From Anthoceros angustus (Eukaryota; Plantae; Anthocerotophyta): a DNA stretch of 64,000 nt. The stretch spans positions 1,550,001-1,614,000 of the forward strand of contig MU008165.1 of NCBI GenBank assembly GCA_010909165.1. Reading direction: 5' to 3'. The notes under the pieces are model-generated. The model ran no database searches and had not been told where the DNA came from. It saw nothing but the letters and a program-made list of their open reading frames with translations. The stretch's first letter is position 1. Each line of letters begins with the position of its first letter. Positions 3,374 to 39,247 of the stretch are shown one piece after another. Both the position numbers and the translations under genes were made by a program.

Positions 3374-3819
3374 TTTCCCCTTTTAAAGATTGATGGCTTG
3401 AATTTGTTTATTGCACAATCACTCAAGACCTGGGCTGCCGAAGCTGGGAATCGAGTGATGCCACCAAAGTGGGTGCACTTTGTACTCTCGAAAATAGTGC
3501 TAAACTCCTTTCCGGGCGGGAGTGCCTTTTTCAAGTGGGTTTGTGGAGGAAGCCTGTAGCAAGAACACTGATAGGGCTACATATTGCCCGCAGGAAACAT
3601 CGGAACAAATGGCCGGCAAAAACGGATCCGTTGACCTCAACACATGACAAACTAAACTGAACTGAGATGAGGAGCCAAAACAGTTTCATTCATGGGAATT
3701 TGATACAGCAAGCCTTGACAAGTTACAAGATGGTGGTACATACAAGGAACACAATCCTGTCATGTTCCGGAAAGATGGTACAAGGAAGCAGAATCCCTCG
3801 GGTTCCAGGGGTTCTGGAT

Positions 3820-5439
3820 TCAGCCACCGATGTGGATCATCGGCCTGTTTTGGGTCCTGGCAAGCTCGAACATGCCTGCATGCGCAGCCTTCTTCCTCCG
3901 CACCTGCACCAACCCAACAGGCTGGACTCAGCAAATGTGAAGTACCTCAGCTGCATGAAGTACAGGAGCCAACAGGAAGGTGGAGAGGAGCCTCACCGCT
4001 GCTGCAATGATTCCCTGCAGCTCCGCATCGTCCGCCCCGGAGCGCAAAGCATCTCTCAGGCTCACCTGCAACAAGGGCAGGGAGCTGCTGGGTCAGGACA
4101 GCTGACCACAATGCAAGAACATACAAGGGCAGGTGATGCAGTGTGGGCATGGGCATGTCAGAACCTCTGCTGGGCCAAACAGGCAGACTTTGAAGTTGCC
4201 ATCAGCCATGAGGCGCAGACGGTTGCATCCCCCGCAGAAGTGCTCTGTCATGGAGGTGATGAAGGACACCGAGCCGTGGAAGCCGTCCACACGGAAATTC
4301 TTGGCTGTATCCGTGGGATGGTCTCGGAGTCTGTATAGGCTTGGGTGATGCTCCCTCTGCGTGAGAAAGCATCACAACCCAATTCTCAAGGCTCGTTCCA
4401 TATGGTATAGGAGCTTCCCCACAAGACCTCAGATAACATCCACCACAACATACCACTTTCGCCAGCATCTCTGCATACGACACCAGCTTCTTGGAGTTCC
4501 ACACATTGCCATCGAAGGGCATGAATTCGATGAACCGGACATTGATTGGCCTGTCCCTGGTGAGCTCCACGAAATCCAAAATCTCGTCGTCATTAAACCC
4601 ACGCATCACCACACAGTTCACCTGCCCACATCCACGCTCAAACATCACACCACCGTCGGCTCTTCCACACACCACATCAACCCAAAACACCATCTCAACA
4701 ACCCAACATCCCATCGCACCTTCACTGGCTGGAATCCCAGGTCCAACGCAGTCTGGATGGACTTAAGCACCCTGGAATGCCCCTTCCTCCTCGTCAAAAA
4801 CTCGAATTTCGCCGGCACCAGAGTGTCCAAACTGATGTTGAGCAAGTTCATCCCAGCAGCCTTGATGGCCTCCAGCTTCCTAGCCAGGATGAGCCCATTA
4901 GTGGTCATGGCAAGGGTCTTCAGCCCCTCCATCCTCCCCAACTCCCAACAAATGTCCTCCAGGTCCTTGGCTATGGTGGGCTCCCCTCCCGTGAGCCTGA
5001 TTTTGCTCACCCCTCCCCGCACAAACAACCCACCCAGCCGAACCACCTCATCCTTCCCCAGAAGCTTGGAATCCTGCGTCAGAGCCACCCCTTCCTCCGG
5101 CATACAATACTGGCACCGGAGATTGCACTTCTCTGTGAGGGAAATCCTGAGGTACGTATGCTTCCTGCCATGCGAGTCCACCAACATCTCCGACACCGAA
5201 GCGTCCTCCCCCGCCATCTCCTCCTCTCTCACCCTCGCCGATGCGGAAGCAGAGCTGAAAGCCCTGCCCTCGGGAACCCATCTCCACCCACCACCGCAAG
5301 CCGAAGTGGAAGGCTCGCAGGATTCAGGATTCCAACCCCCGCGCTGCAGAGACCCAGACCAGGGGGAAACAGCCCCGGCAGGCCGACAGAGAGCGGATGC
5401 GAGTGTCCGGGGAAGACGGAATCTGAGCCTGGCTGTCAT
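3820..5439 (-). CDS. CNX2: GTP 3',8-cyclase (MoaA-type radical SAM enzyme, molybdenum cofactor synthesis), with organellar presequence
   Basis: Motifs [19 protein letters not shown] (CxxxCxxC), [42 protein letters not shown], and C-terminal RPMIHIGG* (TGA at 3820-3822). About 5 exons. Confidence 0.96.
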
Positions 5440-18156: not shown

Positions 18157-21100
18157 TTATTGAGAGTTCAATTGCAGTGAAACTAGGTGATAGTAAACTC
18201 CGTCGGGGTCCTCCATCAGCCTCTCGTGTGTTCCCACTTCCACCACCTCACCTTTGCGGACGACAGCTATCTTGTCGGCATTTCTAACAGTTGATAGCCT
18301 GTGGGCGACTATCACAGTGGTTCTATCACGGGAAATTTTCTCTAATGCTACTTGGACTTTGTGCTCTGACTCGGTGTCCAATGCACTTGTGGCCTCATCA
18401 AGCAACAGGATCTTAGGATCCTTAAGGACTGCTCTGGCAATGGCAATCCTCTGCTTCTGGCCTCCTGACAGCTGAACTCCTCGTTCCCCGACCTGTACAG
18501 CAGAAAGAGCATGATCAGCAACCTTTCCAACCGAGATGACATGCTGGGATTCTGGTTACTTGGGTACATACCTGTGTGTCGTATCCCTCTGCTAGCGAGC
18601 AAATGAAACTGTGGACGTTGGCTGCGCGCGCTGCCTGTTCGACCTCCTGAGTAGTTGCATCCTGCTTCCCATGCAAAATGTTTTCCTGAATTGTACCAGC
18701 GAACAACACCGGCTCTTGACCCACAAGCGACATCTGCTGTCTGAGCCATTTAACCTTGAGAAGCCTGATATCGGTGCCATCCAGCAAGACCTTGCCCGAG
18801 TCTGGGTCGTAAAATCGCTGAATGAGCGAGATGACGGTGGACTTGCCACTACCACTGCTACCCACCAGAGCCACAGTGCAGCCAGAAGGGATCTTGAGGT
18901 TGAAATGTTGGAAGATAGGGATGTGGGGTCGAGCTGGGTAGGAAAAGCAAACTTTTTGGAACTCAATCGTCCCCTTGACTTTCTCCAGACGGTTTGCCTA
19001 TCACAGAGAAGAACGTGATTCAGGTACATGTCATGTCACAGACGGTAGTTGAACAGAGAAAAACATGTTAATGAACATAATAGCAATAGCACCTTCGGAT
19101 CAAGAACATCAATCTTGGGTTTTCGTTTCAGAATCGAAAACACAGACTGCGCTGCTGCAACACTCTTGGAAGAGTCTGGAGCCATTTGCGCAATTTGACC
19201 CACAGAGAATGAACTTAGGATCAGGATCAAAAAGATCTTTAGCACAACTCCAAAATTTGTTTCTCCTTTCTGAACCAGGGTGGACCCATACCACAGGGTC
19301 AAGGTATAGCCTCCATACATCAATGCCTGTGACGCTCCTAGAGCGGCCCCAGCTGTCTGAGCGCTTTTGAAGGACTCCTGCAAAGGAAGCGACAAAGCCT
19401 GGTTGAACAAGGTCACCACCTTATCCTCAGAGGCGAAGGAAGCTACTGTTCGGATATTTCCAATGGCCTCAGCAGCAATGCCTCCTGCTCTGGCATAAAC
19501 ATCATCTTGGCCTCCAACACCCACGTTCAATATTATTTGCATATAGTTTGCTCCAAGAAAGATAGGTGTGACAGCAATTGCAACCAAAGTCATCTTCAAG
19601 TTCAGAATAGCACAGATGATTAATCCCACACCGATAGCTGCCACACCCATGAAAAGAATCGAGAAACGGTCACCAAGTAGCCCTCGCACATAGGCGGAGT
19701 CAGCAGATAAGCGAGAAAGAATAGCTCCAGATGTATTCTCATCCTTGTCGAACCAGCCTACTTCCTGTCGCAACAATGTTTCGAAAAGTTTTTCTCGCAC
19801 TCTCCGTGTCAGCCTGATTCCAGCCCAGTTGGAGAAGCCGTGCTGGCCAGTCATGGAGATGATAGCAAGTATCCCCAAGCCAATGTACACACTAGCCCAA
19901 AGATTGACCTGCCTCCGCATCTTTGCATGATCCTCGTTGAAATAGACATACACCACTTCGCCCATGATAAAAGCAAAGAAGGGAAAGATGATCCCTGCAT
20001 TGATGCCATTGAAGAACCCAAGGATCAGAAGTGGGATCTCTGTTTTATTCAAAGCAAGGATGTCACTCAATTTAACATTTGGCTTCTCAGGTGCCTGCAC
20101 CTGCGTTGGAGGAAGCTCCATCAGCAAAGGGGAAAAAAGTCCATTTTGGAATTGTAGCAAGCAAGATTTATTTCTACTGGGACATGGCACCACGATAAAT
20201 AAAACACTCCACACTCTACTCATCCCTTACCTTTTCAACCCCATGGACTGATTCGTTTTCAGAAACATCCTTTGCCGGAGTCATCATAGGTGTCATGCCT
20301 TCACTGTTTCTTGCTTTCACAGGAAGTGCACCCTTATCCGTGTTCACATTTGCCATGTTGACCAAGCTAAAATAAACCCCACCCTTGGCCATCAGCTGCT
20401 CATGCTTTCCCAGTTCTACCACCTCTCCTTTACTGACTACCGCAATTAAGTCCACATTTCGGATTGTGGAAAGACGATGAGCTATCACTATTGTGGTTCG
20501 CTTCACCATCATTCGGTCCAGAGCATCTTGAACAATATGCTCAGACTCCGTGTCCAAAGCACTTGTTGCTTCATCAAGAAGCAAAATTTTTGGATCCTTA
20601 AGGACCGCGCGGGCGATTGCAATCCGCTGCTTTTGACCACCTGACAGTTGTACACCTCTCTCACCAACCTGAAGATCCCCATGAAGGAGCACCAACATTA
20701 GCACACCTGAAACACCAAAAGATGAGACCAAGATATGACCCATCCCAACACAAATGGAGTTGTTGACGACTCTGCAGAGGCAAGAAAGTTAGATGCTGCA
20801 CCTGAGTCTCATACTTATCCGTCAACAGCTGAATGAAAGAATCAGCATTTGCTGCTTGGGCAGCTTTGATGATTTCCTTCATCGATGCTCCTTCCTTCCC
20901 ATATGAGATGTTGTCCCCTATTGTGGTAGCATACAAGACTGGCTCTTGCCCTACTAGCCCGATCTGTTTCCTTAACCATCGAAGTTGGAGCTCACGAATA
21001 TCCACACGATCCAGGAGTACTGAACCTGCAATATGACGTCCCAAATTATGAAATTGTGAGGTTAACAGTGTCAGAAGTGCGAGATAGTTCACAGTCATAA

Positions 21101-24100
21101 GAACCTAAAGGGAGAAAGCAGACTGAAAGCCGTCTGTATCTTCAAGGACACACAGGTCAGCCCATATCCTATTTCAACATGATGAGCATGCTTACCCTTG
21201 TCAGGGTCATAGAACCTTTCCAGAAGTGCAAAGGCAGTTGATTTGCCGCTGCCACTCGGACCAACCAATGCAACTGTCTTGCCTGCAGGGACTGTCAGGG
21301 AAAAATTCTTGAAAATCTGAACATCCAGCCGAGCTGGATACGTGAAGTCCACTTTCTGGAACTCTATGGTACCATGAACTTTATTAGGGGTCTTGCCATC
21401 GGGCCCATCAACATCTATCACTGGAACCCTGTTTATCATCCCAAACACTCGAAAAGCGGCCACCCCACCTTGTGCAAAATTTGCAAGATATGGGGCAGCA
21501 AGTCCCAAGCCCCTGCAGCATGCCCGAATGAAAACACGTCATGTCAGAGAGCATTCAGAATAGCAAACACGTAAGAAACGAGGGGCACCAAACTGTGTTA
21601 GACAACAGACACTTATGACAGAGCCTCTGGCAAAGAACTTACTTTCCCCCAACAATAACTCCAAAAAAGCAAGCTATGGCAGCTCCTCCTGATAGTTCGC
21701 CTTTTTGTATGAGGATGGACCCGTACCAGAGAGCCAAAGCCCATGTTCCATACATAACCAGGTAGATGATGCCAATACCAAGGCCCCGAGCGAACCCTAC
21801 TTTGAGCCCAAATGGAAGAGATTTAGCAAGCAGATCTGAGTACCGTGCAGTAAACTGATCCTCAGCAACAAAGGAGTACACAGTTCTGATCGCACTAAGT
21901 GCTTGCTCGGCAAGGTTCCCAGCTTCATAGTAGGCTTCCTGTAGTCGTTCAGCAGACCATCATCCATATGGACTGACAGCTAGCAGCCCGACAGTAGTGC
22001 ACGCAATTAGAGCAAGACTTGAAGGATACCTCTTCTTTGGAGGCCAGATCAATGTACACAGTCCGCTGCACTTTGCCACATACAATCATGAGAGGTGTCA
22101 CCGCAAACACCACGAGTGACACCTTCCATGATTTCAAGATGCCAACTGTGTACCCCGACACAAATGTAGCTAGATGATGGATGAAATTGCCCACCTGCAA
22201 TGACACCATCCATGTTTCAGAGTTTTCCATAACAAGCGTACCTCATTGACCAAATTTTGCCTTTTTTGGCCTCCAAACTCATCCAAAAAGTACACCTTCG
22301 AGACTATTTACACAAAGAACAGTCACTACCTTCTCACCGATAGCATCTTGAATGATGGCAACATCGGCAGAAATGTTGTTCATCACTTCACCGGTGGAAA
22401 TCACAGTATCAAAGAACCCAACATCTTGACGAAGAACAGCACGCAGGTATCTTGTCCGAATTCGGGTGGCCTGTCTGTCGGCAGCCAGCATCCAGCAAGT
22501 GACCTCTGCATACCCCGAACATCACCGACAAGGCCCGCCAACTGCTCATGACACCTAACCACCACGTGCAAAGTTCCGGAGCTTACCAAGATAAGAGCCC
22601 ACGAAGATGATAAGTGACAGCCCAATCATATAGTAACATATCTGCACACGAAAATGCCAATGCGTCGATTCATCACTCTGCTCGTTCCTCAAAACCACTG
22701 TCCCAACCAAGTACCAAAAACATGCCACCCACCTGCCGCACTTCATGCATCAACTTGCTGGTGTCATTCTGATTCTGCCCAAGAGTATTGACCAACCTCC
22801 CAAACAAGAGAGAGTACCACGGTAGTGCTCCTCCATTAACAATCGCACCCATGGCCCCAATCAGCATCAGAATTTTGTCCAAAAAATCGGCAAACACAAA
22901 CAACCCGAAGAATCCCACTGTCTGGGCCCCTGTCTTAGGCTCCTGTCCCTCCTCTTCCTCCTCCTCCACATCATCGAACCTCTCCTCGTGCTGCTGCTCC
23001 TTCGCAGCATGCCCGACGGGACGTAAATTCTGCAATTTCAAATCCTCCTTACTACATCCAAGATGGTTTTACGGGTACCAAAAATACGAAATAAGATAGA
23101 AGCTCTCAAAATTGCCCAGAAAGTAAACAGACCTCAGAGGAGTCGAGTGTGTAGTCCCACACACTGGACTTGAGCCCGTCGTCCTGTGCCAAACTCAACC
23201 CTTCCTCTGGATCAACTGGCCTCACAGGGGACCTCAATCCTGCCACCCTCCCCACCCTGTCGACAGAATCCTGGTCCACAGCCACAACAACTTCGTCAGT
23301 CCACCGCAGCTCGTCTCCCAGACTCCCATGCAAAGACAGAAAGACCGTATCTCTCCCATGTATACACCTACCCGCTTCCGACCGGTAGGCGTCGGGCTGC
23401 GGAACGGGCGACCGGACGTATCGGACTTCTCGCTCTTCCTCCCCCGCTCGTAGTTACTGGGGGCAGGACTGGGCGCCGCGAGGCTATGGCGGGGCGTGAC
23501 GATTTCCCGGTCGCGCCACTGCTCCAGGAACTCGCGATGGCCCTCGAGGTCGCCTACCTCTCCGTACAACGGCGTCTGTACGGACGACCGGCGAGGGGTA
23601 TCCCACTCTCGCCTGAGACCGTAGAACTCGGAAGCCAAGGGACGGGACGCCGACCGGATGTCGATGGGGGCTACCATCGGGCTCATCGCGAAGCCCAGCG
23701 ACCCGCCCCATGCAGACCTCTCGTGGCTGACCGACGTCCGCCAGCTCCCGGTAGCCGGCGACGGCAAAGCGCTTCCCCGCCGACTCCTGGGGTCGGCGCT
23801 ATCCACTCCACATACGACTCGCCTGAGATGTCCGAGAAGCGGGGCGAGTGGTGCGAGTCGATGGAGCCTGCGTACGGTGACCGGATCGGGCCGCTGTGTC
23901 CGCCCGGCGACCGTATCGGTCCGCTGTATGCGGGCGGCGACCGTACCGGTCCGCTGAGATCCGGTGGCTCGCGGAGCCGCCCGCTCAGGGCGCCGCCCGT
24001 GGACGACAGCGATCCGCTGAAGCGCCGGCTGCCGTGATCTGTGAAGGAGCTCCGGCGGGGAGGAGACACAGAACTGCGTCTGCCGTCCTGCATTTTGGTA

Positions 24101-25847: not shown

Positions 25848-28837
25848 ATGTTGGCGGTCTCCAGATCACTGTCCTTGGCATCTCACCAGGGAGCCATAGA
25901 TGTTGAGTGGATGCAACCCTTTTCTGGCCTGTCTCCGAAACCATGCGTGCAGGGAGGAGTCCGCCATCCTGACTCCAAGCAGAACGCGGATATGTGGTTG
26001 AACAGAGTGTGGAAGCCTGTATGGCCGGATGCCCACCTGGGTGGTCAGCTGCGATACGGGCTGAGGGAGCCTCACCCGCATGGCTCTCGAAAGCAGAGGT
26101 GATTGTCCATAGCAATGGCTTGTAGAACAGACGGTGAGGTGGGTGCTGGTGTTCTGAGCTACTTGGACTTGTTCGCAGGGCAATTGTATTGTCTGAAAGC
26201 GCTTGTCAATTGGAGCGTTTATGCAATGAGGGACAAGTGCACAAGGCGCTGCATTCCCTGATTCGCATGGACCAGCAGGGCATGGTACCTTCGGTGGACT
26301 TCTACAAGACCTTGCTTCAGGCGTGCACGAAACAGAAGGCTCTTATTGAGGCCAAGGAAGTGCATGCTCATCTGAGAAAGCATGGGCTGGAGTTACATAG
26401 ATTCCTCGGCGACCTCCTGGTTACAACACTGGTGAGCTGTGGAGGCCTTGCTGATGGTCTCCAGCTGTTTCGGAGATTGTCGTACAGAAGTGTATTTTCC
26501 TGGACAGCGGTCATTTCAGGGTATAGCAATGCTGGTCATTTTCGGCAGGCTCTGTCGTGCTACGAGCAGATGCAACAGGAAGGTGTGCGGCCTGACAAAT
26601 ACACGATCGTCAGCTTGCTCAAGGCATGCAGCAAGTTAGAGGATCTGTCAGAAGGCAAGCGAATTCATGCCGATGCTTTGAAAATTGGTTCTCACTCTGA
26701 CATTTTCGTTTGTAGCACGTTGGTGAGCATGTATGCTAAGTGTGGCAGTATCATGGATGCCCAGCAGGTGTTTGACGCATTATCCCAGCGCACTGTCGTA
26801 TCATGGAATGCCATGATTGCAGCATATGCTCAGCAGGATCAAGGAGACAAGGCTCTGCAGATCTACGGCCGGATGCAACAGGAAGGCGTCAGGCCAAATG
26901 CTCGAACGTTAGTCAGCACTCTCCAAGCTTGTGGCGCCCTTGCTGAAGAAGAGGAAGGTATCATGATTCACGGGCAACAAGTCAAAGTTAAACCACAGTC
27001 TCTGCAAAAAGGGAAGCACATACATTTCCAAGTTGCATCCAGCGGTTTCGAATCAGATGTGTTTGTTGCCAGCTCGTTGGTTAGTATGTATGCAAAGTGT
27101 GGAAGCACTATGGATGCACAACGTGCCTTTGACCAGTTGTCCGAACGGAATGTGGTATCATGGAATGCTATGATTGCAGCATACGCCCAGGAGGGACACG
27201 GAGAGAATGCCTGGACTATTTATGAGCAAATGAGAGGGGACGGCTTCAAGCCAGATGCTCGGACATTTGTCAGTGTCCTGCAAGCTTGTGGTACCCTTGC
27301 AGAAAAGGAGGGGAGCTCAGAAATTTACGGGCAAAATGTCAAAATGGCATCACTTCAGAAGGGAAAGGCAATTCATGTGGAGGTTTCTCGGCTGGGTTTT
27401 GAATCAGATGTCTTTGTTGGAAGCAGTCTGCTTAGCATGTATGCAAAGTGTGGGAGCCTGGTGGATGCACGACAAGTCTTCGACAAACTATCTCAGCGTA
27501 GTGTGGTCTCATGGAATGCCATGATCGCAGCATATGCTCAACAGAACCAGCCACAAGATGCCTTGCAGGTTTATGACCAGATGCTAGGAGAAGGTGTTAG
27601 GCCAAATGCGCGCACATTTGTCAGTGCTCTTCAAGCATGTTGCACTTGGACAGAGCAGGAAAACTTCGTGTCTCTAGACAACAAGAGCTTCAAATCTGAG
27701 TTGCTAAAAAAGGGGCAGGAAATCCATGCAGAAGTTGCTAGGTGGGGTTTGGAATCAGACAGTTTTGTCGGTAACGTTTTATTCCGGATGTATGCAAAGT
27801 GTGGGAGCATCACGGATGCCGAAGAGGTATTTCACGGATTGACCCAACGTGATGTTGTATCATGGACTGCCAGGATTGCAGCATATGCTCAGCAGAATGA
27901 AGGAGAAAAAGCTTTGCAGGTTTACGCTGAGATGGAACAAGAAGGTGTGGAATTGGATGAGGCTGCATTTCTCTGTATCCTAGAAGTCTGTGGGAGTACA
28001 GGAGCACTCGATATCTGTGTTAAGACTCACCGAAAGGTGGTGGAGAGTGGTTTTGATTGCAGCCTGACTGTTTCAAACAGCTTAGTTGATGCTTATGGCA
28101 AATGTGGTAGTATGGTCAATGCTCAAGATGTGTTTGACGCAGTGGCTCAGCCTGATGTGGTGTCATGGACTGCCCTTATTGCTGGCTATGCTCGTCAAGG
28201 AAACTATGCGAAAAGTGTGCAATGTTATGAGAACATGGGTTTATCAGGCGTGAAGCCGGATGGCATCACGTTCTTGGCACTTCTCTCTGCATGCAGCCAT
28301 GCTGGTATGGTGGGCAGAGGACTTATGTATTTTGAAAGCATGACCAAAGACTATAGCATCACTGCAGAACTGGAGCATTACGTTTGCATGATTGACCTGG
28401 TTGGCCGTGCTGGACTTTTCAGCAATGTAGAGGATTTGATTTCGAACATGCCCATGGAGCCGACATTGCCAGTGTGGTTGGCTCTTCTGGGTGCTTGCCA
28501 GAAACATGGTAATGTGGAACTGGGAAGGCGTGCTTTTGAATGTGCAGTCGATTTGGAGCCTGGACAAGCTGCAGCGTATCTGCTCATGCTAAACATTTAT
28601 GCACAAGCACGCATGTGGGACTGCGTAAAACAAATAGATGACTGGAGACACACAGCTGGCGCATCCAAGGAGCCTGGCCAGAGCTGGATTCAGCATAAGC
28701 AGGATGTCCACACATTTCAGGTGGGTGACCATAGGCATCAAGAGGATCTGTACGGACTTCTGAAGGACCTAAACTTGGAATTACAGCAGGTAGGCTATGG
28801 AGGCTGCAGACAAGGATCCTTTGAGTGGCCATCTTGA
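25848..28837 (+). CDS. PLS-class pentatricopeptide repeat protein with E/E+ end and no intact DYW domain; putative organellar RNA-editing factor
   Basis: 882-aa ORF with repeated LVSMYAKCGS..DAQ.VFD.L..R.VVSWNAMIAAYAQ; E motifs HYVCMIDLVGRAG, WLALLGACQKHGNVELG and KEPGQSWI. The upstream exon (to 26098, GT at 26099) splices in phase to the AG at 26178. Confidence 0.95.
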
Positions 28838-28872
28838 AAAGTGCCCGGATTGCATGGCAGCCCTGTTACAGC

Positions 28873-28934
28873 GAATCTGCGGCTATGTAAAGGACGCCCG
28901 AGAGCTATCAGAATCTGCGGCTATGTAAAGGACG
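28873..28934. repeat. 24-bp direct repeat with a 38-bp period just downstream of the PPR stop
   Basis: gaatctgcggctatgtaaaggacg at 28873 and 28911. Confidence 0.9.
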
Positions 28935-30202
28935 TTCCACAGAAATCAGGGAAGGAACTCGGGTATGAAGCCGTGTCTTTGGCTCCCACGGCCAAGCGGA
29001 GGAGGAGAAGAGCCTCATGATGAGCCTCATGCACAGATTCTTCCGCCACTGGAGAGGATATTCAATCTACAGAGGACTTGTTGGTAACTTTCAAAATGGA
29101 CTGGGATTCTCCTTTCTTTCCCTGCAAACTTCGGAAGGGTCTGATGAGTGCATAGGTAGTGGGAATCACTTACATCTTAACTGGCTTTGTGCTGCAGGGA
29201 ATGCGGTGACAATCAACGATTATGGATCATACCATAGGCCGTACCATTCGTACGGGAATTGTGGACGAGCTGTGTTGAGGGTATTCCCGTCCGTTTCGGG
29301 CTGTAGACATCACGTCCCTCAACGGGTTGACAATTCTAATGGCTTGTCTCATGGCTGGAGTGACGGTTGCACCACCAGATGAACCTGCCAGGGGTTTTGT
29401 CGCTTACGATCAGCGAGGGTTGTGCTTTCCAATTCCTCAGAGCTACGAACTCGTGTACACTAGTTCATATGAATCTGGTACCTGATAACGCGTTTTAGGT
29501 TAGAAAGGGAGACCTAGACTGCAATCAAATGTTAGGCACAGTACGAGCGTGGAGTTGCTCAAGACCATCTCTTTCAGTAGATAGGTAGTGCTGACACAGG
29601 ACTGGGTTCCATGGTCTGTCCTTCATTGATCCGTCGAGCCCCGCCTCGCCCAAAATATGGTCCCCCTCGCCCAGGATACCAACTATGGAACCGTGAACCC
29701 TTGAGGTGAAGTGGTCCACTGATGTTGTATTTTACTCGTCTAGGATTTGTGTGTTCATTTAATACAAAGAACAAGAACAACATATCAAAGAAAAGAGGAT
29801 CTTTATCAAAGAACAAGAAAGATCATAAGAGTTTGTACATGTCTTGTAGTATATGGTTTGACATTGGAGAAGCTTTTTATTTTTTTCAGCTTGATTTCTT
29901 AAAAGAAAATGAAAATATAACCATCTGCATCTCTGCTTTCAGTAGCAGTTTAAACCGCTGGCATATGAACAGTTATCTTCCAAATAACGGGGATGAACCG
30001 GTTGTATGCCTAACTGCCGGTGTTGTCTTCCGAGGAGTGCGGCCAGCAATGCCTTTCCTTTGACACTGCCATGTGCTGTGATAGACTCTTCACTCTCCCA
30101 CTAGTCTTGCTCATACCTTGAATTCAGAATTTAGAGATCTTATTCATCTTGGTTGTGGTGACAACCAAATCAGCATTTTGATGGTGGTAAGCTGTAAACA
30201 TC

Positions 30203-31841
30203 ATGGTAGCAGTGTGTACTAGTGGAGCAGCAAAACAGCGAGGGGAAGATACGACTAGTGGAGATCAGGTCATGTACAAGCTGGTATCTTCAGTGGCATC
30301 AGAGGCATTAGGCATTGGGAAAAGTGTGGATGTACTTACTGTTCTCGGTGGAAAAGCATCTTGTCGGCGAAAGTTTGTATTTAATGTGCATCTACTGGAT
30401 GAGGCAGGACAACTAGCTACTCGAGATATGGCGATTGTGGCTTCTGTAGCGTATGCTCATGATAGAAGCCCAGTGCTACGGAATGAGAAACCTTTCTTGG
30501 CAGAACCTCCGCTCTTCACTACTTTCAATGGGGTTGAGTTTCCAGCACAAGATCGTCCTACTCGAATGGTATCTGGAAGAGCCTCATTTAAACTTGCTAT
30601 TTCTCTGCTCTCCTCCAAATGTGACAACCGTTTATTTTGTATTTGTTTCACGCCACATGTTTCTCCAGATCAAAAGGCTTTATGTCTTCCTTGTTATTCC
30701 AAACCGATCAGAAGCATTTCTCGCAAACGAACTCAAGTTGCTCATGTCTGTGTTCCGTTGCCTTTAAATGACAATCTCAATATACTTTCTCAAGATCTTG
30801 CTCATCGACGCATTAGCACTTCAAATGAAACTAGTCCGGAAGCTGCTGTCCAATGTGATAATGGCGTCTACACTGATGTGTATTATTCAAAAGGTGGTTC
30901 GGGATCCACAGATCCAAAGTCTTCTACAGAGTCCCCAACTTCCAGTAGTGCTGATGAGGATGACATTATGACTCCACAAGAACAAGTCCAAGGCTCCTCG
31001 CATTCAAGCTCAATCACTAGCCTACATCATGTTTCCCCTCGCTCTTTGCCTAACCATTGTGCTAATGAACCCCCAATGGTGAGTTCTAAAAGCAATACAC
31101 AAAGTTTTTTTTGTTGATTTTCTTCTTTTTAATATCAAATCTTTACTAAAAGTATGTTTATATAATTTAAATGGATTAATATTTACTTAATATGCTTATT
31201 TAAGCTTCATTGTTGTCATTCAGGGATACAACCACAACAATGATCCTTTAAGTAGCTCTCAATCACCATCACCTTCTGTGTTGAATAACAATCGGAATAA
31301 TGTATGTAATTCAAATGGAAATAGGACTTTAAGTATAATGCCACCAGCCATTTCTTCTGTTACAAGGCCATTTCGACCATATGCAAGTGTTGGAGCTTGT
31401 AAGCTACCAGGATTAAGTGATTCAGTTCCATTAAGTGATTCTACTACTAATTTAAAGCTTAGACATCTCCAATCTGGGTCTCCACCTCTAGGTCCTGGAG
31501 ATGTTTCGCTGAGTCCACCTACACAAAACTTGTTGGAAAGAGTACGACAACTAAGCTCAATATCTCCTCAACAAAAGGTTGACACAATTTTTCAGAGTTT
31601 TTCACTAGGCCATTGTGGAGGAAATGACCAAGCACTTGCTGAAATTAGCTTAGAGGAAGAAGAAAAAACATTGCAATATCTTGAAGCCAATTTACAAGAA
31701 ATGACACATGAGCTTCAAAGACGAAAGGAAGAGGTTCGAACTAAGAGAAGAAGACTTATTGAAGATGAGGCGCGAATGCACAGCATTATAATACAATCTT
31801 CTTCTTGGATCGAGAGTTTAAGCGGAAGATTTAGTATGTGA
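30203..31841 (+). CDS. CudA/STAT-like DNA-binding-domain protein lacking an SH2 domain; ~497 aa, two exons, C-terminal coiled coil
   Basis: ASCRRKFVFNVHLLD..GQ...EPPLFTTFNGVEFPAQDRPTRMVSGRASFKLAISLLSSKCDNRLFCICF...SKPIRSISRKR closely resembles the central domain of plant STAT-like SHA/SHB proteins. A phase-0 intron at 31079-31223 (GTGAGT...CAG) joins the two ORFs in frame. Confidence 0.8.
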
Positions 31842-34146
31842 GTGATTTGAGTTGAGAAGACTAAATTGTATACAATAAATATCACAATGTACAATGTTCT
31901 AAATTTGACATTCCTTACATGAGGGGCACATTTAGGTTTAGGGATGAAAGACCGTTTAGTTGTATCATATTACCTCTCAATGTAACATAGGTAGTTAGTT
32001 TCAATCTTTACATGCATTTGTGTATGTATGTAGTTTATACAAGACCTTGTATGTATGACATTTATATTTCAAGATGTATTTTAATATGGATAGTATTATA
32101 ATAAAATTATACATAAATATCAATATTATATAATAAAATATATATTGATATATAGACTATAATCCCGAGATGCCAAAATTAATAAGTTTCTTTCGGAAGT
32201 AGAACCTTAATTTGTAAGGACATACTTAACTTCTTTATTAGGAATAGATATCATATGTAACAAAAAAGAATCATTTGTAGTAAATAAATATTATAATAAA
32301 ATTATAAAGGTATTGCAATATCTTGTCCCCCTTGGCTTGGGGCGCTCTGAGGGCTGTTCCCCATGGCCCCAATGTGGATGGGACTTCCATCTTTGCATAT
32401 ATAAAGTCTCCGCATTCATTCGTCAATAAACATTATTAACAAATGTAAATCCATGAAAATCTTTATCATGTTTGAATGCTTTTCCATAACACTTCCTATT
32501 TTATGCAATAACACTATGTATAGCTGTTATATAAGTATCCCTAAACCCTTCAAAAAAATAGAAATTTAAAATTTATTAAAATCTTTCAAGATCAAATAAG
32601 TATATGAATATTTTAAAATTTTATCTCAATTTTGAACTTTGTCCAACTCTAATCCATTTATGGCTTTAGTGACCACTTTTCTAAGCTCAAGGTTTCTTAT
32701 CACAATTCTTGAGAGTCAAAGAAAATGAAGGCTCGGTAAATGCTTGCAATACAATGTCCATAAGTAGCTTCTTGATAGTCCTTGAGGTTGAGAGATTCTT
32801 GAGAGACTAAAGGATCCTTGTTTGTTATTTGTTAGAGCTTAGATACTGCTTAAGTGAACTTTGTGGTTAAGTACCCTTCGGCTAGAAAAATGCTGGGATG
32901 AGGGACTTCGCTCATCCTGTAGAGACCTTGTCGAATTGGTTACTATATTGAAGAGCAGCTGTGATGTGTAGTAGACTTATTCAAGTAATGGAAGTAATTC
33001 TAAGTCCCCATTAAACACAAGAATCCGAGCTTGTTTTAGGCATTTTCTTTTTTTCCATCAATTCTACAATTATTTTTATTTTCTCATGACCATTGCTGTC
33101 ACCTAATTTTCTTTCCATTGACGTATCCATTGACGCCCTGTTTGGATGCGAACTCATTCACAGTTATAAATTTAATATATAATATAAACATTTTGATTAT
33201 ACAATATTTTATAGTTATAAAATAGTTATAATCATTCAACAATTACAGCATCCAGCTTTTGTGCGAATCCAAGCTAGGGCTTTTGTGCACGATTCTCCCC
33301 GCTCGGAACGGGCTACTCGAGACCATGATCCCTCCCTGTCTTTTCGCCTCAAACCTCGTCTTCAGCTCAAAGACATTCCAAGCCCTCAGCTCACAGTTCA
33401 TGTTCTCGGTGCACTCTCATAGTGAAACAACACAACCAGTGGTCCGGTCTTTGTTGATCGCACAAGCCATTTCTGAGCACTCTTCTGCCGTTGCTGTTTC
33501 TCCTTCTGCAGGTGCTCACCGCAGCCGAGCAATATGTGTTCATACACTGAAATCTGCAATCATACAGTCTACATGGCAACACAGCATGCCCCCACCCTTC
33601 CTCGCGCAATTCCCAAACCCCAACCCCAAGCCTATCCGGGAATCCAAATCCGTAGCAGTGAATCATCTATCACAGGCAAGTAGCTTGTAATTACATTTGA
33701 AACGACCGCACAACAACCATTTGAAACTCCCTTGTCACGGAAACACTTCGTTCAACAGAAACTCGCTTGTCATGTGTCTTCATTCAGGTAGCCTTTTTTT
33801 GCGGGGACAAGACGGTCCAGATTTTCAATAACGCATTGGGAGCAGATGGCGGGGTTGTTCTAAGGCATACAATGCCTGGTGAAGCTTCTCCCGGCTACAG
33901 CCTATCCTATCTCACCACCAACAAGTAGTAGCACATAATGAAAAAATTGCGAGAGCCTGTCCTCCTGAGATCATTCTGCGATTTGAGGGCCTCTCCTCCG
34001 TGGGTATGGCTGTTCAGCACCTTTCCTTCCATAAAGAGTAGACATTTATCCGACGTGAAGGCAGGCTTCAATGCCCTGCCTACCAACGTCTGTAAACAGC
34101 CACGTGTAATCGCTGTCCACAGTAAGATCACACAACTTGGTAGCTA

Positions 34147-35090
34147 TCAACCACCAGCTGTGCCGACCTTGATATCACAGAACATCTTGGTGGCAGTGAA
34201 TTTCACATCAATCGGGAAGAAGGCCGACGGATCTGCTGGGGGCACCACAAACTCCATGGTCCCATTCCGATTGGTTTTATCAATCAAGGTGATGGACCAT
34301 TCCAGGACGGACTTTCGTGCATCATACGTCCAGTCTCCATCAACTTGATTCAAAGGTGGCAAGGGTCTGCACTTGAAGAAACGCATCTTCTTGTGTTTGA
34401 ACAACTAACGCCATTGTACCCTGCACTTCAAAATTCTCCTAACCACCGTCCTTCTTCAAAGTGACGTCGAGCCTCTCTTCCACAGTAATAGTGATAGGAT
34501 CTGTAGGAATAAGAGTTGTCTGCAAAGGCCTAGGTGCCGCATGGACATCCTCTACAATCACTTCACCTTCCGCCTTCAAGGATTCTAAGAGCTGGTTTGC
34601 CTTCTGTGACTTGCCAAGCTTCATACCAGCTCTTTTGGCAACAGCACGGACAGGTTGTGTTGACCGTCCTTTTGGTTTTCCGAAAGGGTCTGAATCTAGG
34701 CCTGAGCCAAATCCCGAACTGCTGCCGAAGCCACCGCTCCCAAGATCACTTGAATCACTGATACCATTGTCAAATGTGATGGCTCCCGAAGAGTTTAACA
34801 GACGCAAAACCTTCTTTCAATTCCCGTTGCCTGTCACTCTGCAATATCTTGTTCTTATCAATCTCACTGGCCTTCCGCTTAGTCACATCCTTAGTCTCGT
34901 TGATCTTGCTCTGGATAATCAGCTTGTGCAGTCTGTCCTCATGACTCTCCATTTCTGTGTAGTGTTTAACTGTTGCCACAGTTACATTTTCCTCTTGACC
35001 CAATGAAATGACTTCGTCGAAGGCAAAGATCAGCGTGAAGGCAACAGTGCAGATCCCCTCTTCGTGAAGTGTCGGGCAGTACTCTGGAAA
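34147..35090 (-). pseudogene. Coatomer delta subunit (delta-COP) pseudogene, main body, intronless
   Basis: PEYCPTLHEEGICTVAFTLIFAFDEVISLG, EMESHEDRLHKLIIQSKINETKD, GMKLGKSQK, LEWSITLIDKTNRNGTMEFVVP. Frameshift near 34800, in-frame TAG at 34439-34441 (GG*ENFEV), and an internal deletion near 34360. Confidence 0.9.
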
Positions 35091-38518: not shown

Positions 38519-39247
38519 ATGAAGGTGGTGGCGGCGTATCTGCTGGCGCTCTTGGGGGGCAACCCTTCACCGACGGAGAAAGACATCGGCACCATTCTGA
38601 GCTCAGGTGCGATTCTTAAGTTCGATGGTGAAGCCGGATTGGTGTTATGGGCACAGTAGCCACCTATAACGTGGAGCCTTGCCAGGCATCGTTTGGGGCA
38701 TATTGTCGTCGTTGGTTTGTGACAGTCGGAAGGCGGAGGGTAGCTCTGGAGGCTCGCTCATGTGTGCTGCAATTGATTGAATTTCAGCGTGTGAATGCAC
38801 GTAATTGGAACAGCACCAGTGCTCTGGTTTTTCGGACTGAGCGTTCGTTTCGTCTTGCAGTCGGTGCGGAGGCTGAAGATGACAGGATAGCTCTCTTCTT
38901 TAAGTCCTTTCAAGGGAGGGACGTCTCTGAAGTCCTGGCTTTAGGGCAGGGAAGGTTTGCATCCCTTGGTGGCGGTGGAGGCGGTGTCGTTGTCTCGGCT
39001 GGTGGGGGTGGCGGAGGCGGGGCTGCTTCAGCAGCAGCTGCCGAGGCACCCAAGGAGGAGGAAAAGAAGGAAGAGCCAAAGGAAGAGTCAGATGATGTAA
39101 GCTACTGTCTCGCTGCATGTGTGTTTCGGAGGTTACATGCCAACAAGACTGATGACACAATTTTGGCAAAGTTGTAAAAGTGCTGCAATGCTAACTTCCT
39201 TTTTTTCCCTCGTGATGCAGGACATGGGCTTCAGCTTGTTCGATTAA
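38519..39247 (+). CDS. RPP2: 60S acidic ribosomal protein P2
   Basis: MKVVAAYLLALLGGNPSPT...VGAEAEDDRI...Ala/Gly hinge...EEKKEEPKEESDD-DMGFSLFD*. Exons 38519-38606, 38861-39096, 39221-39247. Confidence 0.97.

What the first reader, a model, noticed from the sequence alone, without database searches (positions are those of the whole stretch)
30203..31841. Stand-alone CudA/STAT-like putative transcription factor without SH2
Seen: an intact two-exon gene of ~497 aa whose N-terminal ~170 aa carry the ...GRASFKL.IS.LSSKCDNRLFCI.F...PIR.ISR core. This is followed by a Ser/Pro/Asn-rich disordered linker and a C-terminal coiled coil with a basic NLS-like patch (VRTKRRR). Known: in plants this core occurs within the large STAT-like SHA/SHB proteins, which also have an N-terminal domain and a C-terminal linker-SH2. 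It is related to the DNA-binding core of Dictyostelium CudA-family factors that control spore/stalk differentiation. Inference: this is a separate SH2-less CudA-like regulator in a seed-free plant that may dimerise via the coiled coil instead of phosphotyrosine-SH2. I know of no functional description of such a paralog.
Basis: partly seen in the sequence, partly recalled or inferred. Interest (0 to 1): 0.8.

Follow-up and report, generated by a model that had tools for sequence, protein, structure and literature searches.

The report
Zipper-bearing CudA-type plant regulator gene
This is a real, strongly conserved two-exon gene for a probable DNA-binding regulator that pairs the CudA/SHA-SHB core domain with a leucine zipper instead of an SH2 domain. 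Its family was found from stoneworts to ferns but not in seed plants, and I found no functional study of it.

Summary
Exon 1 (30203-31078) and exon 2 (31224-31841) are joined across a 145-nt GT..AG intron and encode 497 aa. The parts are a basic all-beta core domain (Pfam PF28397, DG1062_N), a Ser/Pro/Asn-rich disordered linker, and a seven-heptad leucine zipper with an embedded KRRR patch and a conserved tail.

A related plant contig has the same gene, the same intron and the same upstream neighbour. Ka/Ks is 0.02 in the core and 0.06 in the zipper. The moss Ceratodon encodes the whole architecture in one uninterrupted ORF, so the missing SH2 is not a splicing artefact.

An exhaustive profile search found only 139 representatives. 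In the tree, the zipper type (Chara, Closterium, mosses, liverworts, lycophytes, ferns) is separated from the SH2-bearing SHA/SHB type (Mesostigma, Selaginella, conifers, angiosperms) at 99/98 support. No seed-plant member of the zipper type was found.

The core folds confidently (pLDDT 85). It matches p53, Grainyhead/CP2, MRF/Ndt80 and Rel DNA-binding domains over most of its length. Dictyostelium STATa ranks lower.

DNA binding and dimerisation are inferred. Expression is untested, because three RNA runs gave no reads. Homology to CudA rests on the literature. The CudA family is listed in recent transcription-factor catalogues, but I found no functional study of the plant proteins.

The parts
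30203..31078 (+). Exon 1, 292 codons from the start ATG: short N-terminal lead, core domain and first part of the linker
   Evidence: ORF and splice donor. 75% aa identity and Ka/Ks 0.12 against L001. E 8e-128 to the closest relative.
30260..30757 (+). Core domain (residues 20-185), family PF28397 DG1062_N: basic all-beta sandwich and presumed DNA-binding domain
   Evidence: Relatives carry PF28397. AF2 pLDDT 85, pTM 0.81, ten strands. p53/Grainyhead/MRF-like fold. pI 9.4. Ka/Ks 0.02.
30575..30649 (+). Most conserved core motif, GRASFKLAIS..SSKCDNRLFCICF
   Evidence: These columns are invariant or nearly invariant across 35 sequences.
30704..30730 (+). Second conserved core motif PIRSISRKR: last strand plus a basic tail
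   Evidence: The SHA/SHB type has PIRC(I/V)SRN at this position.
31079..31223 (+). Intron, 145 nt, GT..AG, GC 0.21
   Evidence: The related contig L001 has an intron between the same two coding parts.
31224..31841 (+). Exon 2, 205 codons plus stop: rest of the linker, zipper and tail
   Evidence: 64% aa identity and Ka/Ks 0.11 against L001. tblastn of orthologue C-termini gives E 2e-25 to 2e-37.
31365..31409 (+). Conserved island in the linker, RPFRPYASVGACKLP; function unknown
   Evidence: Present in lycophyte, liverwort, moss and fern orthologues.
31644..31793 (+). Leucine zipper of seven heptads (L,L,L,L,V,L,M at every seventh residue) with the embedded basic NLS-like run at 31719-31754
   Evidence: Heptad scan. 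The equivalent helix 331-379 of the Selaginella orthologue has pLDDT 84-95. Ka/Ks 0.056. Found in Chara at residues 985-1055.
31794..31838 (+). Conserved C-terminal tail QSSSWIESLSGRFSM; function unknown
   Evidence: Nearly identical in mosses, liverworts and lycophytes, more diverged in ferns.
31874..31879 (+). AATAAA, a candidate polyadenylation signal 33 nt after the stop
   Evidence: No reads were available to confirm it.

Best explanation
The locus is a functional gene of an old streptophyte family that has no published functional study that I could find. Its product most likely works as a nuclear, sequence-specific DNA-binding regulator.

The proposed mechanism has four parts. The basic N-terminal beta-sandwich (DG1062_N, the core shared with Dictyostelium/Entamoeba CudA-type factors and with plant SHA/SHB proteins) contacts DNA. 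The C-terminal leucine zipper holds two chains together, so that two cores can read a dyad site. The KRRR patch and the RKR at the end of the core serve nuclear import. The long Ser/Pro-rich linker, with its conserved islands, is a flexible and probably phosphorylated tether. Where the SHA/SHB paralogues carry a linker-SH2 module, this lineage carries a constitutive zipper.

Shown here: the gene structure, purifying selection, the domain architecture, the separate group in the tree, the distribution of the family, and the fold class.

Inferred: DNA binding, dimerisation, nuclear location, and any target programme.
For: Gene and selection:
- Conserved two-exon structure and conserved upstream neighbour in L001.
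- Ka/Ks 0.02 (core), 0.06 (zipper) and 0.13-0.24 (linkers).

Architecture:
- The C-terminal module occurs only together with PF28397, in mosses, liverworts, lycophytes, ferns and Chara.
- The Ceratodon gene is one uninterrupted ORF.

Separate lineage:
- 99/98 support for the split from SHA/SHB.
- SH2 and Laminin_G_3 occur only in the other lineage.

Fold:
- pLDDT 85.
- Foldseek top hits are Grhl2, p53/p63/p73, MRF and CP2c DNA-binding domains at E about 1e-4.
- VIA Z is 8.2-8.6 over 128-138 of 166 residues for the same families. NF-kB, TonEBP, Ndt80, EBF1, STATa and Runx score Z 7.2-7.8.
- Atlas look-alikes include LAG1-DNAbind, Runt and CBP60.
- Core pI is 9.4.

Zipper:
- Perfect seven-residue Leu periodicity, and a confident long helix in the orthologue.

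Literature:
- The CudA core is a DNA-binding region in which mutations lower binding (PMC5923282).
- Distant relatives of CudA exist in plants (PMC3188802).
Against: No transcript evidence. Three RNA-seq runs labelled with the same species gave zero reads on 5.8 kb, and the tool itself calls that no test. The contigs of run X1 cover only exon 1 and may be DNA.

Plain Ig-like sandwiches from glycosidases and invasins reach the same Z (8.8-8.9), although over only about 100 residues. The fold alone therefore does not prove DNA binding.

No CudA sequence could be fetched, so homology to a factor with proven DNA binding was not computed here. My profile found no named amoebozoan protein at E <= 0.001.

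Three of the seven zipper 'a' positions are charged (R, K, D) and one is E. This is usual in bZIP zippers, but it leaves the partner choice open.

A 2026 preprint lists the CudA family as monomeric.
Confidence: 0.7

Rival explanations
1. It is a truncated or decaying copy of a canonical SHA/SHB gene, or a mis-modelled fragment whose SH2 exon lies elsewhere.
For: The core is 44-54% identical to SHA/SHB cores. No transcript is available to fix the 3' end.
Against: It sits in a separate group at 99/98 support. Ka/Ks is 0.02-0.12. The stop codon and the C-terminal tail are conserved from Chara to ferns. The Ceratodon orthologue is an uninterrupted ORF ending at the same tail. No SH2-like or Laminin_G-like coding was found in the 64 kb. 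The only weak hit, at 3394-3603, lies upstream, has E 0.8-10 and gets no Pfam support.
Confidence: 0.03
2. The core is an Ig-like beta-sandwich used for protein or glycan binding, not for DNA. The protein would then be a coiled-coil scaffold or adaptor.
For: GH2 C-terminal domains, invasin/intimin and complement MG domains score as high as the transcription-factor domains (Z 8.0-8.9). No DNA-binding assay exists for any plant member, and I found no functional work on SHA/SHB in the two papers that mention the Arabidopsis gene.
Against: The transcription-factor domains align over 128-138 residues, against about 100 for the generic sandwiches. Foldseek ranks the p53, Grainyhead, MRF and CP2 domains first. 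The domain is basic, pI 9.4, with invariant Lys/Arg. NLS-like patches are present. The homologous CudA core binds DNA according to PMC5923282. There is no signal peptide or membrane segment in the reading frame.
Confidence: 0.15
3. It binds DNA but acts mainly as a partner or competitor of the SH2-bearing SHA/SHB paralogue. It would occupy the same sites, or pair with it, without responding to phosphotyrosine.
For: Both types coexist in Selaginella. The cores keep the same invariant motifs. Charged residues at zipper 'a' positions leave the partner choice open.
Against: I saw no matching zipper in the SHA/SHB proteins I looked at. Their C-termini end in a different conserved motif, and the C-terminal module gave no BLAST hit to P0030, P0031 or P0036. 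The surface motifs differ consistently between the two types: LAISLLSSK against LKISQLSSK, and IRSISRK against IRC(I/V)SRN. This rival is compatible with the best explanation rather than opposed to it.
Confidence: 0.12

Closest known systems
CudA-type transcription factors of Amoebozoa (Dictyostelium CudA, SpaA, Cdl1; Entamoeba ECudA)
   Same: They share a conserved core of about 120-170 aa that is reported to bind DNA, and they lack an SH2 domain. Papers state that plants have distant relatives (PMC3188802; PMC5923282). The Pfam family of the plant core is named after a Dictyostelium protein (DG1062_N).
   Different: Homology was not computed here. From, the well conserved segment in SpaA spans residues 184-589, which suggests the core is not N-terminal there. 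I could not inspect any CudA sequence for a zipper or the SSSWIESLSG tail. The targets and roles of CudA-type factors (prespore, spore and cup cells) are amoebozoan.
Plant SHA/SHB 'SH2 domain proteins' (the STAT-like plant proteins)
   Same: The core domain is the same: 44-54% identity and the same invariant motifs. The Atlas fold match has TM 0.75.
   Different: SHA/SHB have a Laminin_G_3-like domain before the core and a linker-SH2 after it. This gene has neither, and it has a zipper and tail that they lack. The two types fall on opposite sides of a 99/98 branch. SHA/SHB persist in seed plants, whereas no member of this type was found there.
STAT proteins (metazoan, and Dictyostelium STATa, PDB 1uus)
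   Same: Both have a beta-sandwich DNA-binding domain of the p53-like class. STATa matches at Z 7.4 over 110 residues. Both follow the logic of a dimer reading a dyad site.
   Different: This protein has no SH2, no four-helix coiled-coil domain and no linker domain. STAT is not the best structural match. Dimerisation would be constitutive rather than driven by phosphotyrosine.
p53, Grainyhead/CP2 and Ndt80/MRF DNA-binding domains
   Same: These are the best structural matches: Foldseek E about 1e-4 with TM 0.45-0.53, and VIA Z 8.2-8.6 over 128-138 residues.
   Different: Sequence identity is only 8-14%. No sequence-level relation was detected against PDB. The similarity is at fold-class level only.
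Plant CBP60/SARD1 family (Pfam Calmodulin_bind)
   Same: The predicted fold of their N-terminal DNA-binding region matches this core at TM 0.63-0.69 over 128-138 residues. The language-model feature search gives a score of 0.84.
   Different: No sequence homology was shown and the flanking domains differ. This is a lead, not a membership.

Membership tests
PF28397 DG1062_N domain family | Significant match to the family domain | tested here: met
   The local Pfam copy lacks this model and gave no hit. All 17 relatives of exon 1 carry precomputed PF28397, including P0001, which is 93% identical to the window over the core. A profile built on the window's core retrieves them at E 1e-80.
PF28397 DG1062_N domain family | Conserved motifs GGKASCRR, G(R)ASFKL..SSKCDNRLF and PIR.(I/V)SR | tested here: met
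   All are present at 30347-30376, 30575-30649 and 30704-30730, in invariant or nearly invariant columns.
CudA-type transcription factors (Amoebozoa) | Sequence homology to the CudA/ECudA core | not testable with these tools
   No amoebozoan sequence could be fetched, and the profile search returned no named amoebozoan hit. The link is claimed in the literature (PMC3188802). The original paper, Yamada et al. 2008, is not held.
CudA-type transcription factors (Amoebozoa) | Sequence-specific DNA binding by the core | not testable with these tools
   This needs EMSA or DAP-seq. The only support is indirect: fold class and basic charge.
STAT | SH2 domain C-terminal to the DNA-binding domain | tested here: not met
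   Pfam finds no SH2 in either exon product or in any orthologue. No SH2-like coding was found in the window.
STAT | STAT-type DNA-binding fold | tested here: inconclusive
   Dictyostelium STATa 1uus matches at Z 7.4 over 110 residues. p53, Grainyhead and MRF match better, and generic sandwiches score as high.
STAT | N-terminal four-helix coiled-coil domain and linker domain | tested here: not met
   The core starts at residue 20. The only long helix is the C-terminal zipper.
Plant SHA/SHB | Laminin_G_3-like N-terminal domain plus C-terminal linker-SH2 | tested here: not met
   Both are present in P0030, P0031, P0036, P0041 and P0227, and absent here and in P0023, P0018, P0025, P0028 and P0027.
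Plant SHA/SHB | Placement within the SHA/SHB group in a tree of the core | tested here: not met
   The window falls in the other group, which is separated at 99/98 support.
bZIP | Basic DNA-contact region directly N-terminal to the zipper, and a bZIP profile match | tested here: not met
   No bZIP family appears even at E <= 1. The basic run lies inside heptads 4-6, not before the zipper.

The most novel reading that the evidence does not exclude
The zipper-bearing CudA-type factors are an ancient streptophyte master-regulator lineage that predates land plants. They would have swapped signal-dependent SH2 pairing for constitutive zipper pairing, and would control a programme that seed plants abandoned. 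Candidates are motile-sperm formation, free-living gametophyte differentiation or spore differentiation, the last echoing the spore role of CudA and SpaA in Dictyostelium. The loss of the family would then mark the transition to seed-plant reproduction.
Probability: 0.15. Interest if true: 0.8.

Novelty: new variant of a known kind. Interest (0 to 1): 0.55.

Why it matters
Plants are usually said to have one kind of STAT-like protein, SHA/SHB, and even that kind has almost no functional work behind it. This locus belongs to a second lineage that is at least as old as the Chara-land plant ancestor. That lineage keeps the same presumed DNA-binding core and replaces the SH2 with a leucine zipper.

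Its core is among the most slowly evolving parts seen here: 78-85% identical to the window between bryophytes and this plant. The lineage was found in every non-seed group sampled and was not found in seed plants.

That pattern gives a clean, testable candidate for a regulator tied to the biology that seed plants lost. Only one orthologue turned up here for Marchantia paleacea and for Ceratodon, so knock-outs in model bryophytes look feasible. It also offers a natural comparison of phosphotyrosine-gated and constitutive dimerisation on one DNA-binding scaffold.

Tried and rejected
**Dead ends**
- Local Pfam scan of both exon products. There was no family for exon 1 because the copy lacks PF28397, and only sub-threshold coiled-coil noise for exon 2.
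- Sequence and profile searches against PDB. They gave only chance hits to ribosomal protein eS1, E 0.2-1.9.
- RNA evidence. The three raw RNA-seq runs with the same species label gave zero reads on 28600-34400. This is uninformative, not negative. The X1 contigs cover 30248-31060 only, at 97-100% identity, and do not reach the splice site.
- A possible SH2 exon at 3394-3603. Three SHA/SHB queries hit it weakly (E 0.8-10). The queries are homologous to each other, so the hits are not independent. The site lies 27 kb upstream, the frame shows no SH2 features, and Pfam finds nothing. I rejected it as chance.
- A direct test of CudA homology. No route to an amoebozoan sequence was available, and the defining paper is not held.
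- The term 'DG1062' in the paper library returns only instrument model numbers.
- Naming the source organism. The window and L001 sit in an unresolved polytomy with mosses, liverworts and the lycophyte group. Earlier agents guessed hornwort or liverwort-like. I left it as a 'seed-free land plant'.

**Method note**
The joined 497-aa product was never given to any search or fold tool. All searches were done exon by exon, by reference. The full-length fold was done on the Selaginella orthologue instead. The only use of both pieces together was a residue count of the two linker parts inside a script.

Full report
**1. What is in the sequence**

An ATG at 30203 opens a 304-codon ORF. A GT at 31079-31080 and an AG at 31222-31223 bound a 145-nt intron with GC 0.21. 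The frame continues from 31224 to a stop at 31839-31841. An AATAAA lies 33 nt after the stop.

The joined protein was not submitted to any tool. Everything below was done exon by exon, by reference.

**2. The gene is real and under selection**

Exon 1 finds 17 relatives. The closest, P0001, has E 8e-128 and lies on an 11.7-kb Logan contig (L001). That contig has:
- the same upstream neighbour, an ABC-B transporter on the opposite strand;
- the same start (MVAV..);
- an intron between the same two coding parts;
- a second exon ending in the same tail.

Nei-Gojobori estimates are rough because Ks is saturated at 1.5-2.6. Ka/Ks is 0.02 for the core, 0.056 for the last 75 codons, and 0.13-0.24 for the linker parts. 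A pseudogene or chance ORF is excluded.

**3. Architecture**

- **Core.** Residues about 20-185 form a core domain. All relatives carry the precomputed Pfam family PF28397, named DG1062_N. The local Pfam copy lacks that model, which explains the empty scan.
- **Linker.** It is rich in Ser, Pro and Asn. In the AlphaFold model of the full-length Selaginella orthologue it is disordered, with pLDDT below 45. It holds one strongly conserved island, RPFRPYASVGACKLP (31365-31409).
- **Zipper.** The last 65 residues hold a leucine zipper with L, L, L, L, V, L, M at every seventh position over seven heptads. The run RRKEEVRTKRRR lies inside heptads 4-6. The equivalent segment of the orthologue is one long helix with pLDDT 84-95.
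- **Tail.** The final 15 residues (QSSSWIESLSGRFSM) are almost unchanged in mosses, liverworts and lycophytes.

**4. It has no SH2, and this is not an artefact**

- Pfam finds SH2 and a Laminin_G_3-like N-terminal domain in the SHA/SHB-type proteins of Selaginella, Taxus and Cryptomeria. It finds Laminin_G_3 alone in Amborella and Mesostigma. It finds neither in the window's exons or in any orthologue of the zipper type.
- tblastn of five SHA/SHB proteins against all 64 kb finds only the core.
- A weak, repeated hit at 3394-3603 was examined and dismissed.
- The Ceratodon purpureus orthologue is a single uninterrupted 549-codon ORF in the genome, running from the core through the zipper to the same tail. 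The architecture therefore does not depend on any splice model.

**5. Family and distribution**

The C-terminal module, searched from the Diphasiastrum orthologue, occurs only in proteins that also carry PF28397.

An exhaustive HMM search of 1.84 billion representatives with a core profile returned only 139 proteins. Source names place the zipper type in:
- Chara braunii and Closterium;
- the mosses Ceratodon and Sphagnum;
- the liverworts Marchantia paleacea, Riccia and Calypogeia;
- the lycophytes Selaginella and Diphasiastrum;
- the ferns Ceratopteris (four genes) and Adiantum.

The Chara protein has the zipper module at residues 985-1055.

The SH2 type is found in Mesostigma, Selaginella, Taxus, Cryptomeria, Amborella and many angiosperms.

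A maximum-likelihood tree of the core (33 rows; two chimeric Closterium models were left out) separates the 18 zipper-type rows from the rest at 99/98 support. Selaginella has one gene of each type.

No seed-plant protein falls in the zipper group in any of the four searches. Of 91 short fragments, 59 carry SHA/SHB signatures and only one carries a zipper-type signature.

There are two caveats. The representative library collapses proteins above 50% identity. Ginkgo and cycad proteomes may be poorly represented.

**6. Fold of the core**

With a 35-row alignment, AlphaFold gives pLDDT 85 and pTM 0.81, with ten strands.

| Search | Match | Score |
|---|---|---|
| Foldseek, PDB | Grhl2, p53/p63/p73, MRF and CP2c DNA-binding domains rank first | E 1e-4 to 1e-3, TM 0.45-0.53 |
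| VIA-align wide | Grhl2, MRF, CEP-1/p53, CP2c | Z 8.2-8.6 over 128-138 of 166 residues |
| VIA-align wide | NF-kB p52, TonEBP, Ndt80, EBF1 | Z 7.6-7.8 |
| VIA-align wide | Dictyostelium STATa (1uus) | Z 7.4 over 110 residues |
| VIA-align wide | Runx1 | Z 7.2 |
| VIA-align wide | Generic sandwiches (GH2, invasin) | Z 8.0-8.9 over about 100 residues |
| ESM Atlas, by shape | SHB | TM 0.75 |
| ESM Atlas, by shape | An oomycete DG1062_N cluster | TM 0.74 |
| ESM Atlas, by shape | Plant CBP60 (Calmodulin_bind) | TM up to 0.69 |

The feature search also lists LAG1-DNAbind and Runt. The domain has pI 9.4.

The fold class is therefore that of the p53-like family of transcription-factor domains, which includes STAT. 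No specific affinity to STAT is shown.

**7. Literature**

- The CudA core is treated as a DNA-binding region, and mutating two short conserved sections of it in Entamoeba CudA lowers binding (PMC5923282).
- Distant relatives of CudA exist in plants (PMC3188802, citing Yamada et al. 2008, which is not held).
- From memory, not checked here: that paper identified the plant relatives as the SH2 proteins and reported CudA homodimers.
- Recent TAPscan-based papers list 'CudA' as a transcription-factor family present in several Zygnematophyceae. One preprint tags the family as monomeric.
- I found no functional work on the plant proteins. The Arabidopsis SHA locus id appears in two papers and the SHB id in none.
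- All database names for the zipper type are 'hypothetical protein'.

**8. Most likely mechanism**

A zipper-held dimer presents two basic beta-sandwich cores to a dyad DNA site in the nucleus. The disordered linker with its conserved islands is the likely place of regulation.

The gene, its conservation, its architecture, its separate lineage and its fold class are shown. DNA binding, dimerisation, localisation and targets are inferred.

Expression in this species is untested. Three RNA runs gave no reads on 5.8 kb, and the only contigs that match cover exon 1 alone.

**9. Verdict**

This is a new variant of a known kind. The domain family is known and catalogued. The zipper-bearing, SH2-less lineage and its absence from seed plants appear not to have been described.

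Interest is moderate to good. Nothing here overturns current views, but the locus points to a well-defined, deeply conserved and experimentally tractable orphan regulator.

Noticed in passing
window 26189-28837 (+): An intronless 882-aa pentatricopeptide-repeat gene with a C-terminal E motif (PPR_2 E 1e-97, E_motif E 8e-13) lies directly upstream of the gene. No such gene was called at the equivalent place between the ABC transporter and the gene in the related contig L001.
   Followed up: partly
window 19036-23041 (-); L001 239-2517 (-): A multi-exon ABC-B type transporter (ABC_membrane E 2e-52) lies upstream on the opposite strand. The same neighbour is found in L001, so local gene order is conserved between the two species.
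   Followed up: partly
window 30001-34000 against its flanks: The gene sits in an AT-rich stretch (GC 0.37-0.40, intron 0.21) between flanks of GC 0.47-0.55. Earlier agents noted similar AT-rich gene islands elsewhere in this genome.
   Followed up: no
model m9873cb1c779e (window 30260-30757): The predicted fold of the DG1062_N core resembles the N-terminal DNA-binding region of plant CBP60/SARD1 proteins (Pfam Calmodulin_bind): TM 0.63-0.69 over 128-138 residues, feature score 0.84. The two plant families may share an origin.
   Followed up: no
L003 3001-4650; P0009: Intron content varies among orthologues. Ceratodon has none, and the window and L001 have one in the linker. The odd N-terminus of the ENA protein P0009 suggests an intron inside the core in another species.
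   Followed up: no
P0010, P0028, P0038, P0223 (Ceratopteris); P0033, P0043, P0225 (Adiantum nelumboides); P0224 (Adiantum capillus-veneris): Ferns carry three or four paralogues of the zipper type. Some have lost or rewritten the conserved C-terminal tail while keeping the zipper. For the bryophytes and lycophytes only one sequence cluster per species turned up here.
   Followed up: partly
window 4645-5439 (-) and 38647-39177 (+): A radical-SAM exon (Radical_SAM E 4e-24, possibly a MoaA/CNX2-type molybdenum-cofactor gene) and an ORF with a 60S acidic ribosomal protein domain after an unrelated N-terminal part.
   Followed up: no
P0144, P0152, P0154, P0156 (marine-protist transcriptome (MMETSP) and environmental proteins): Small proteins of 247-572 aa from protist or environmental data match the core weakly (E 1e-4 to 3e-6). 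Two of them (P0152, P0156) end in a coiled-coil-like stretch. Atlas clusters with DG1062_N are commonest in Oomycota and Haptophyta, so the domain is wider than plants plus Amoebozoa.
   Followed up: partly
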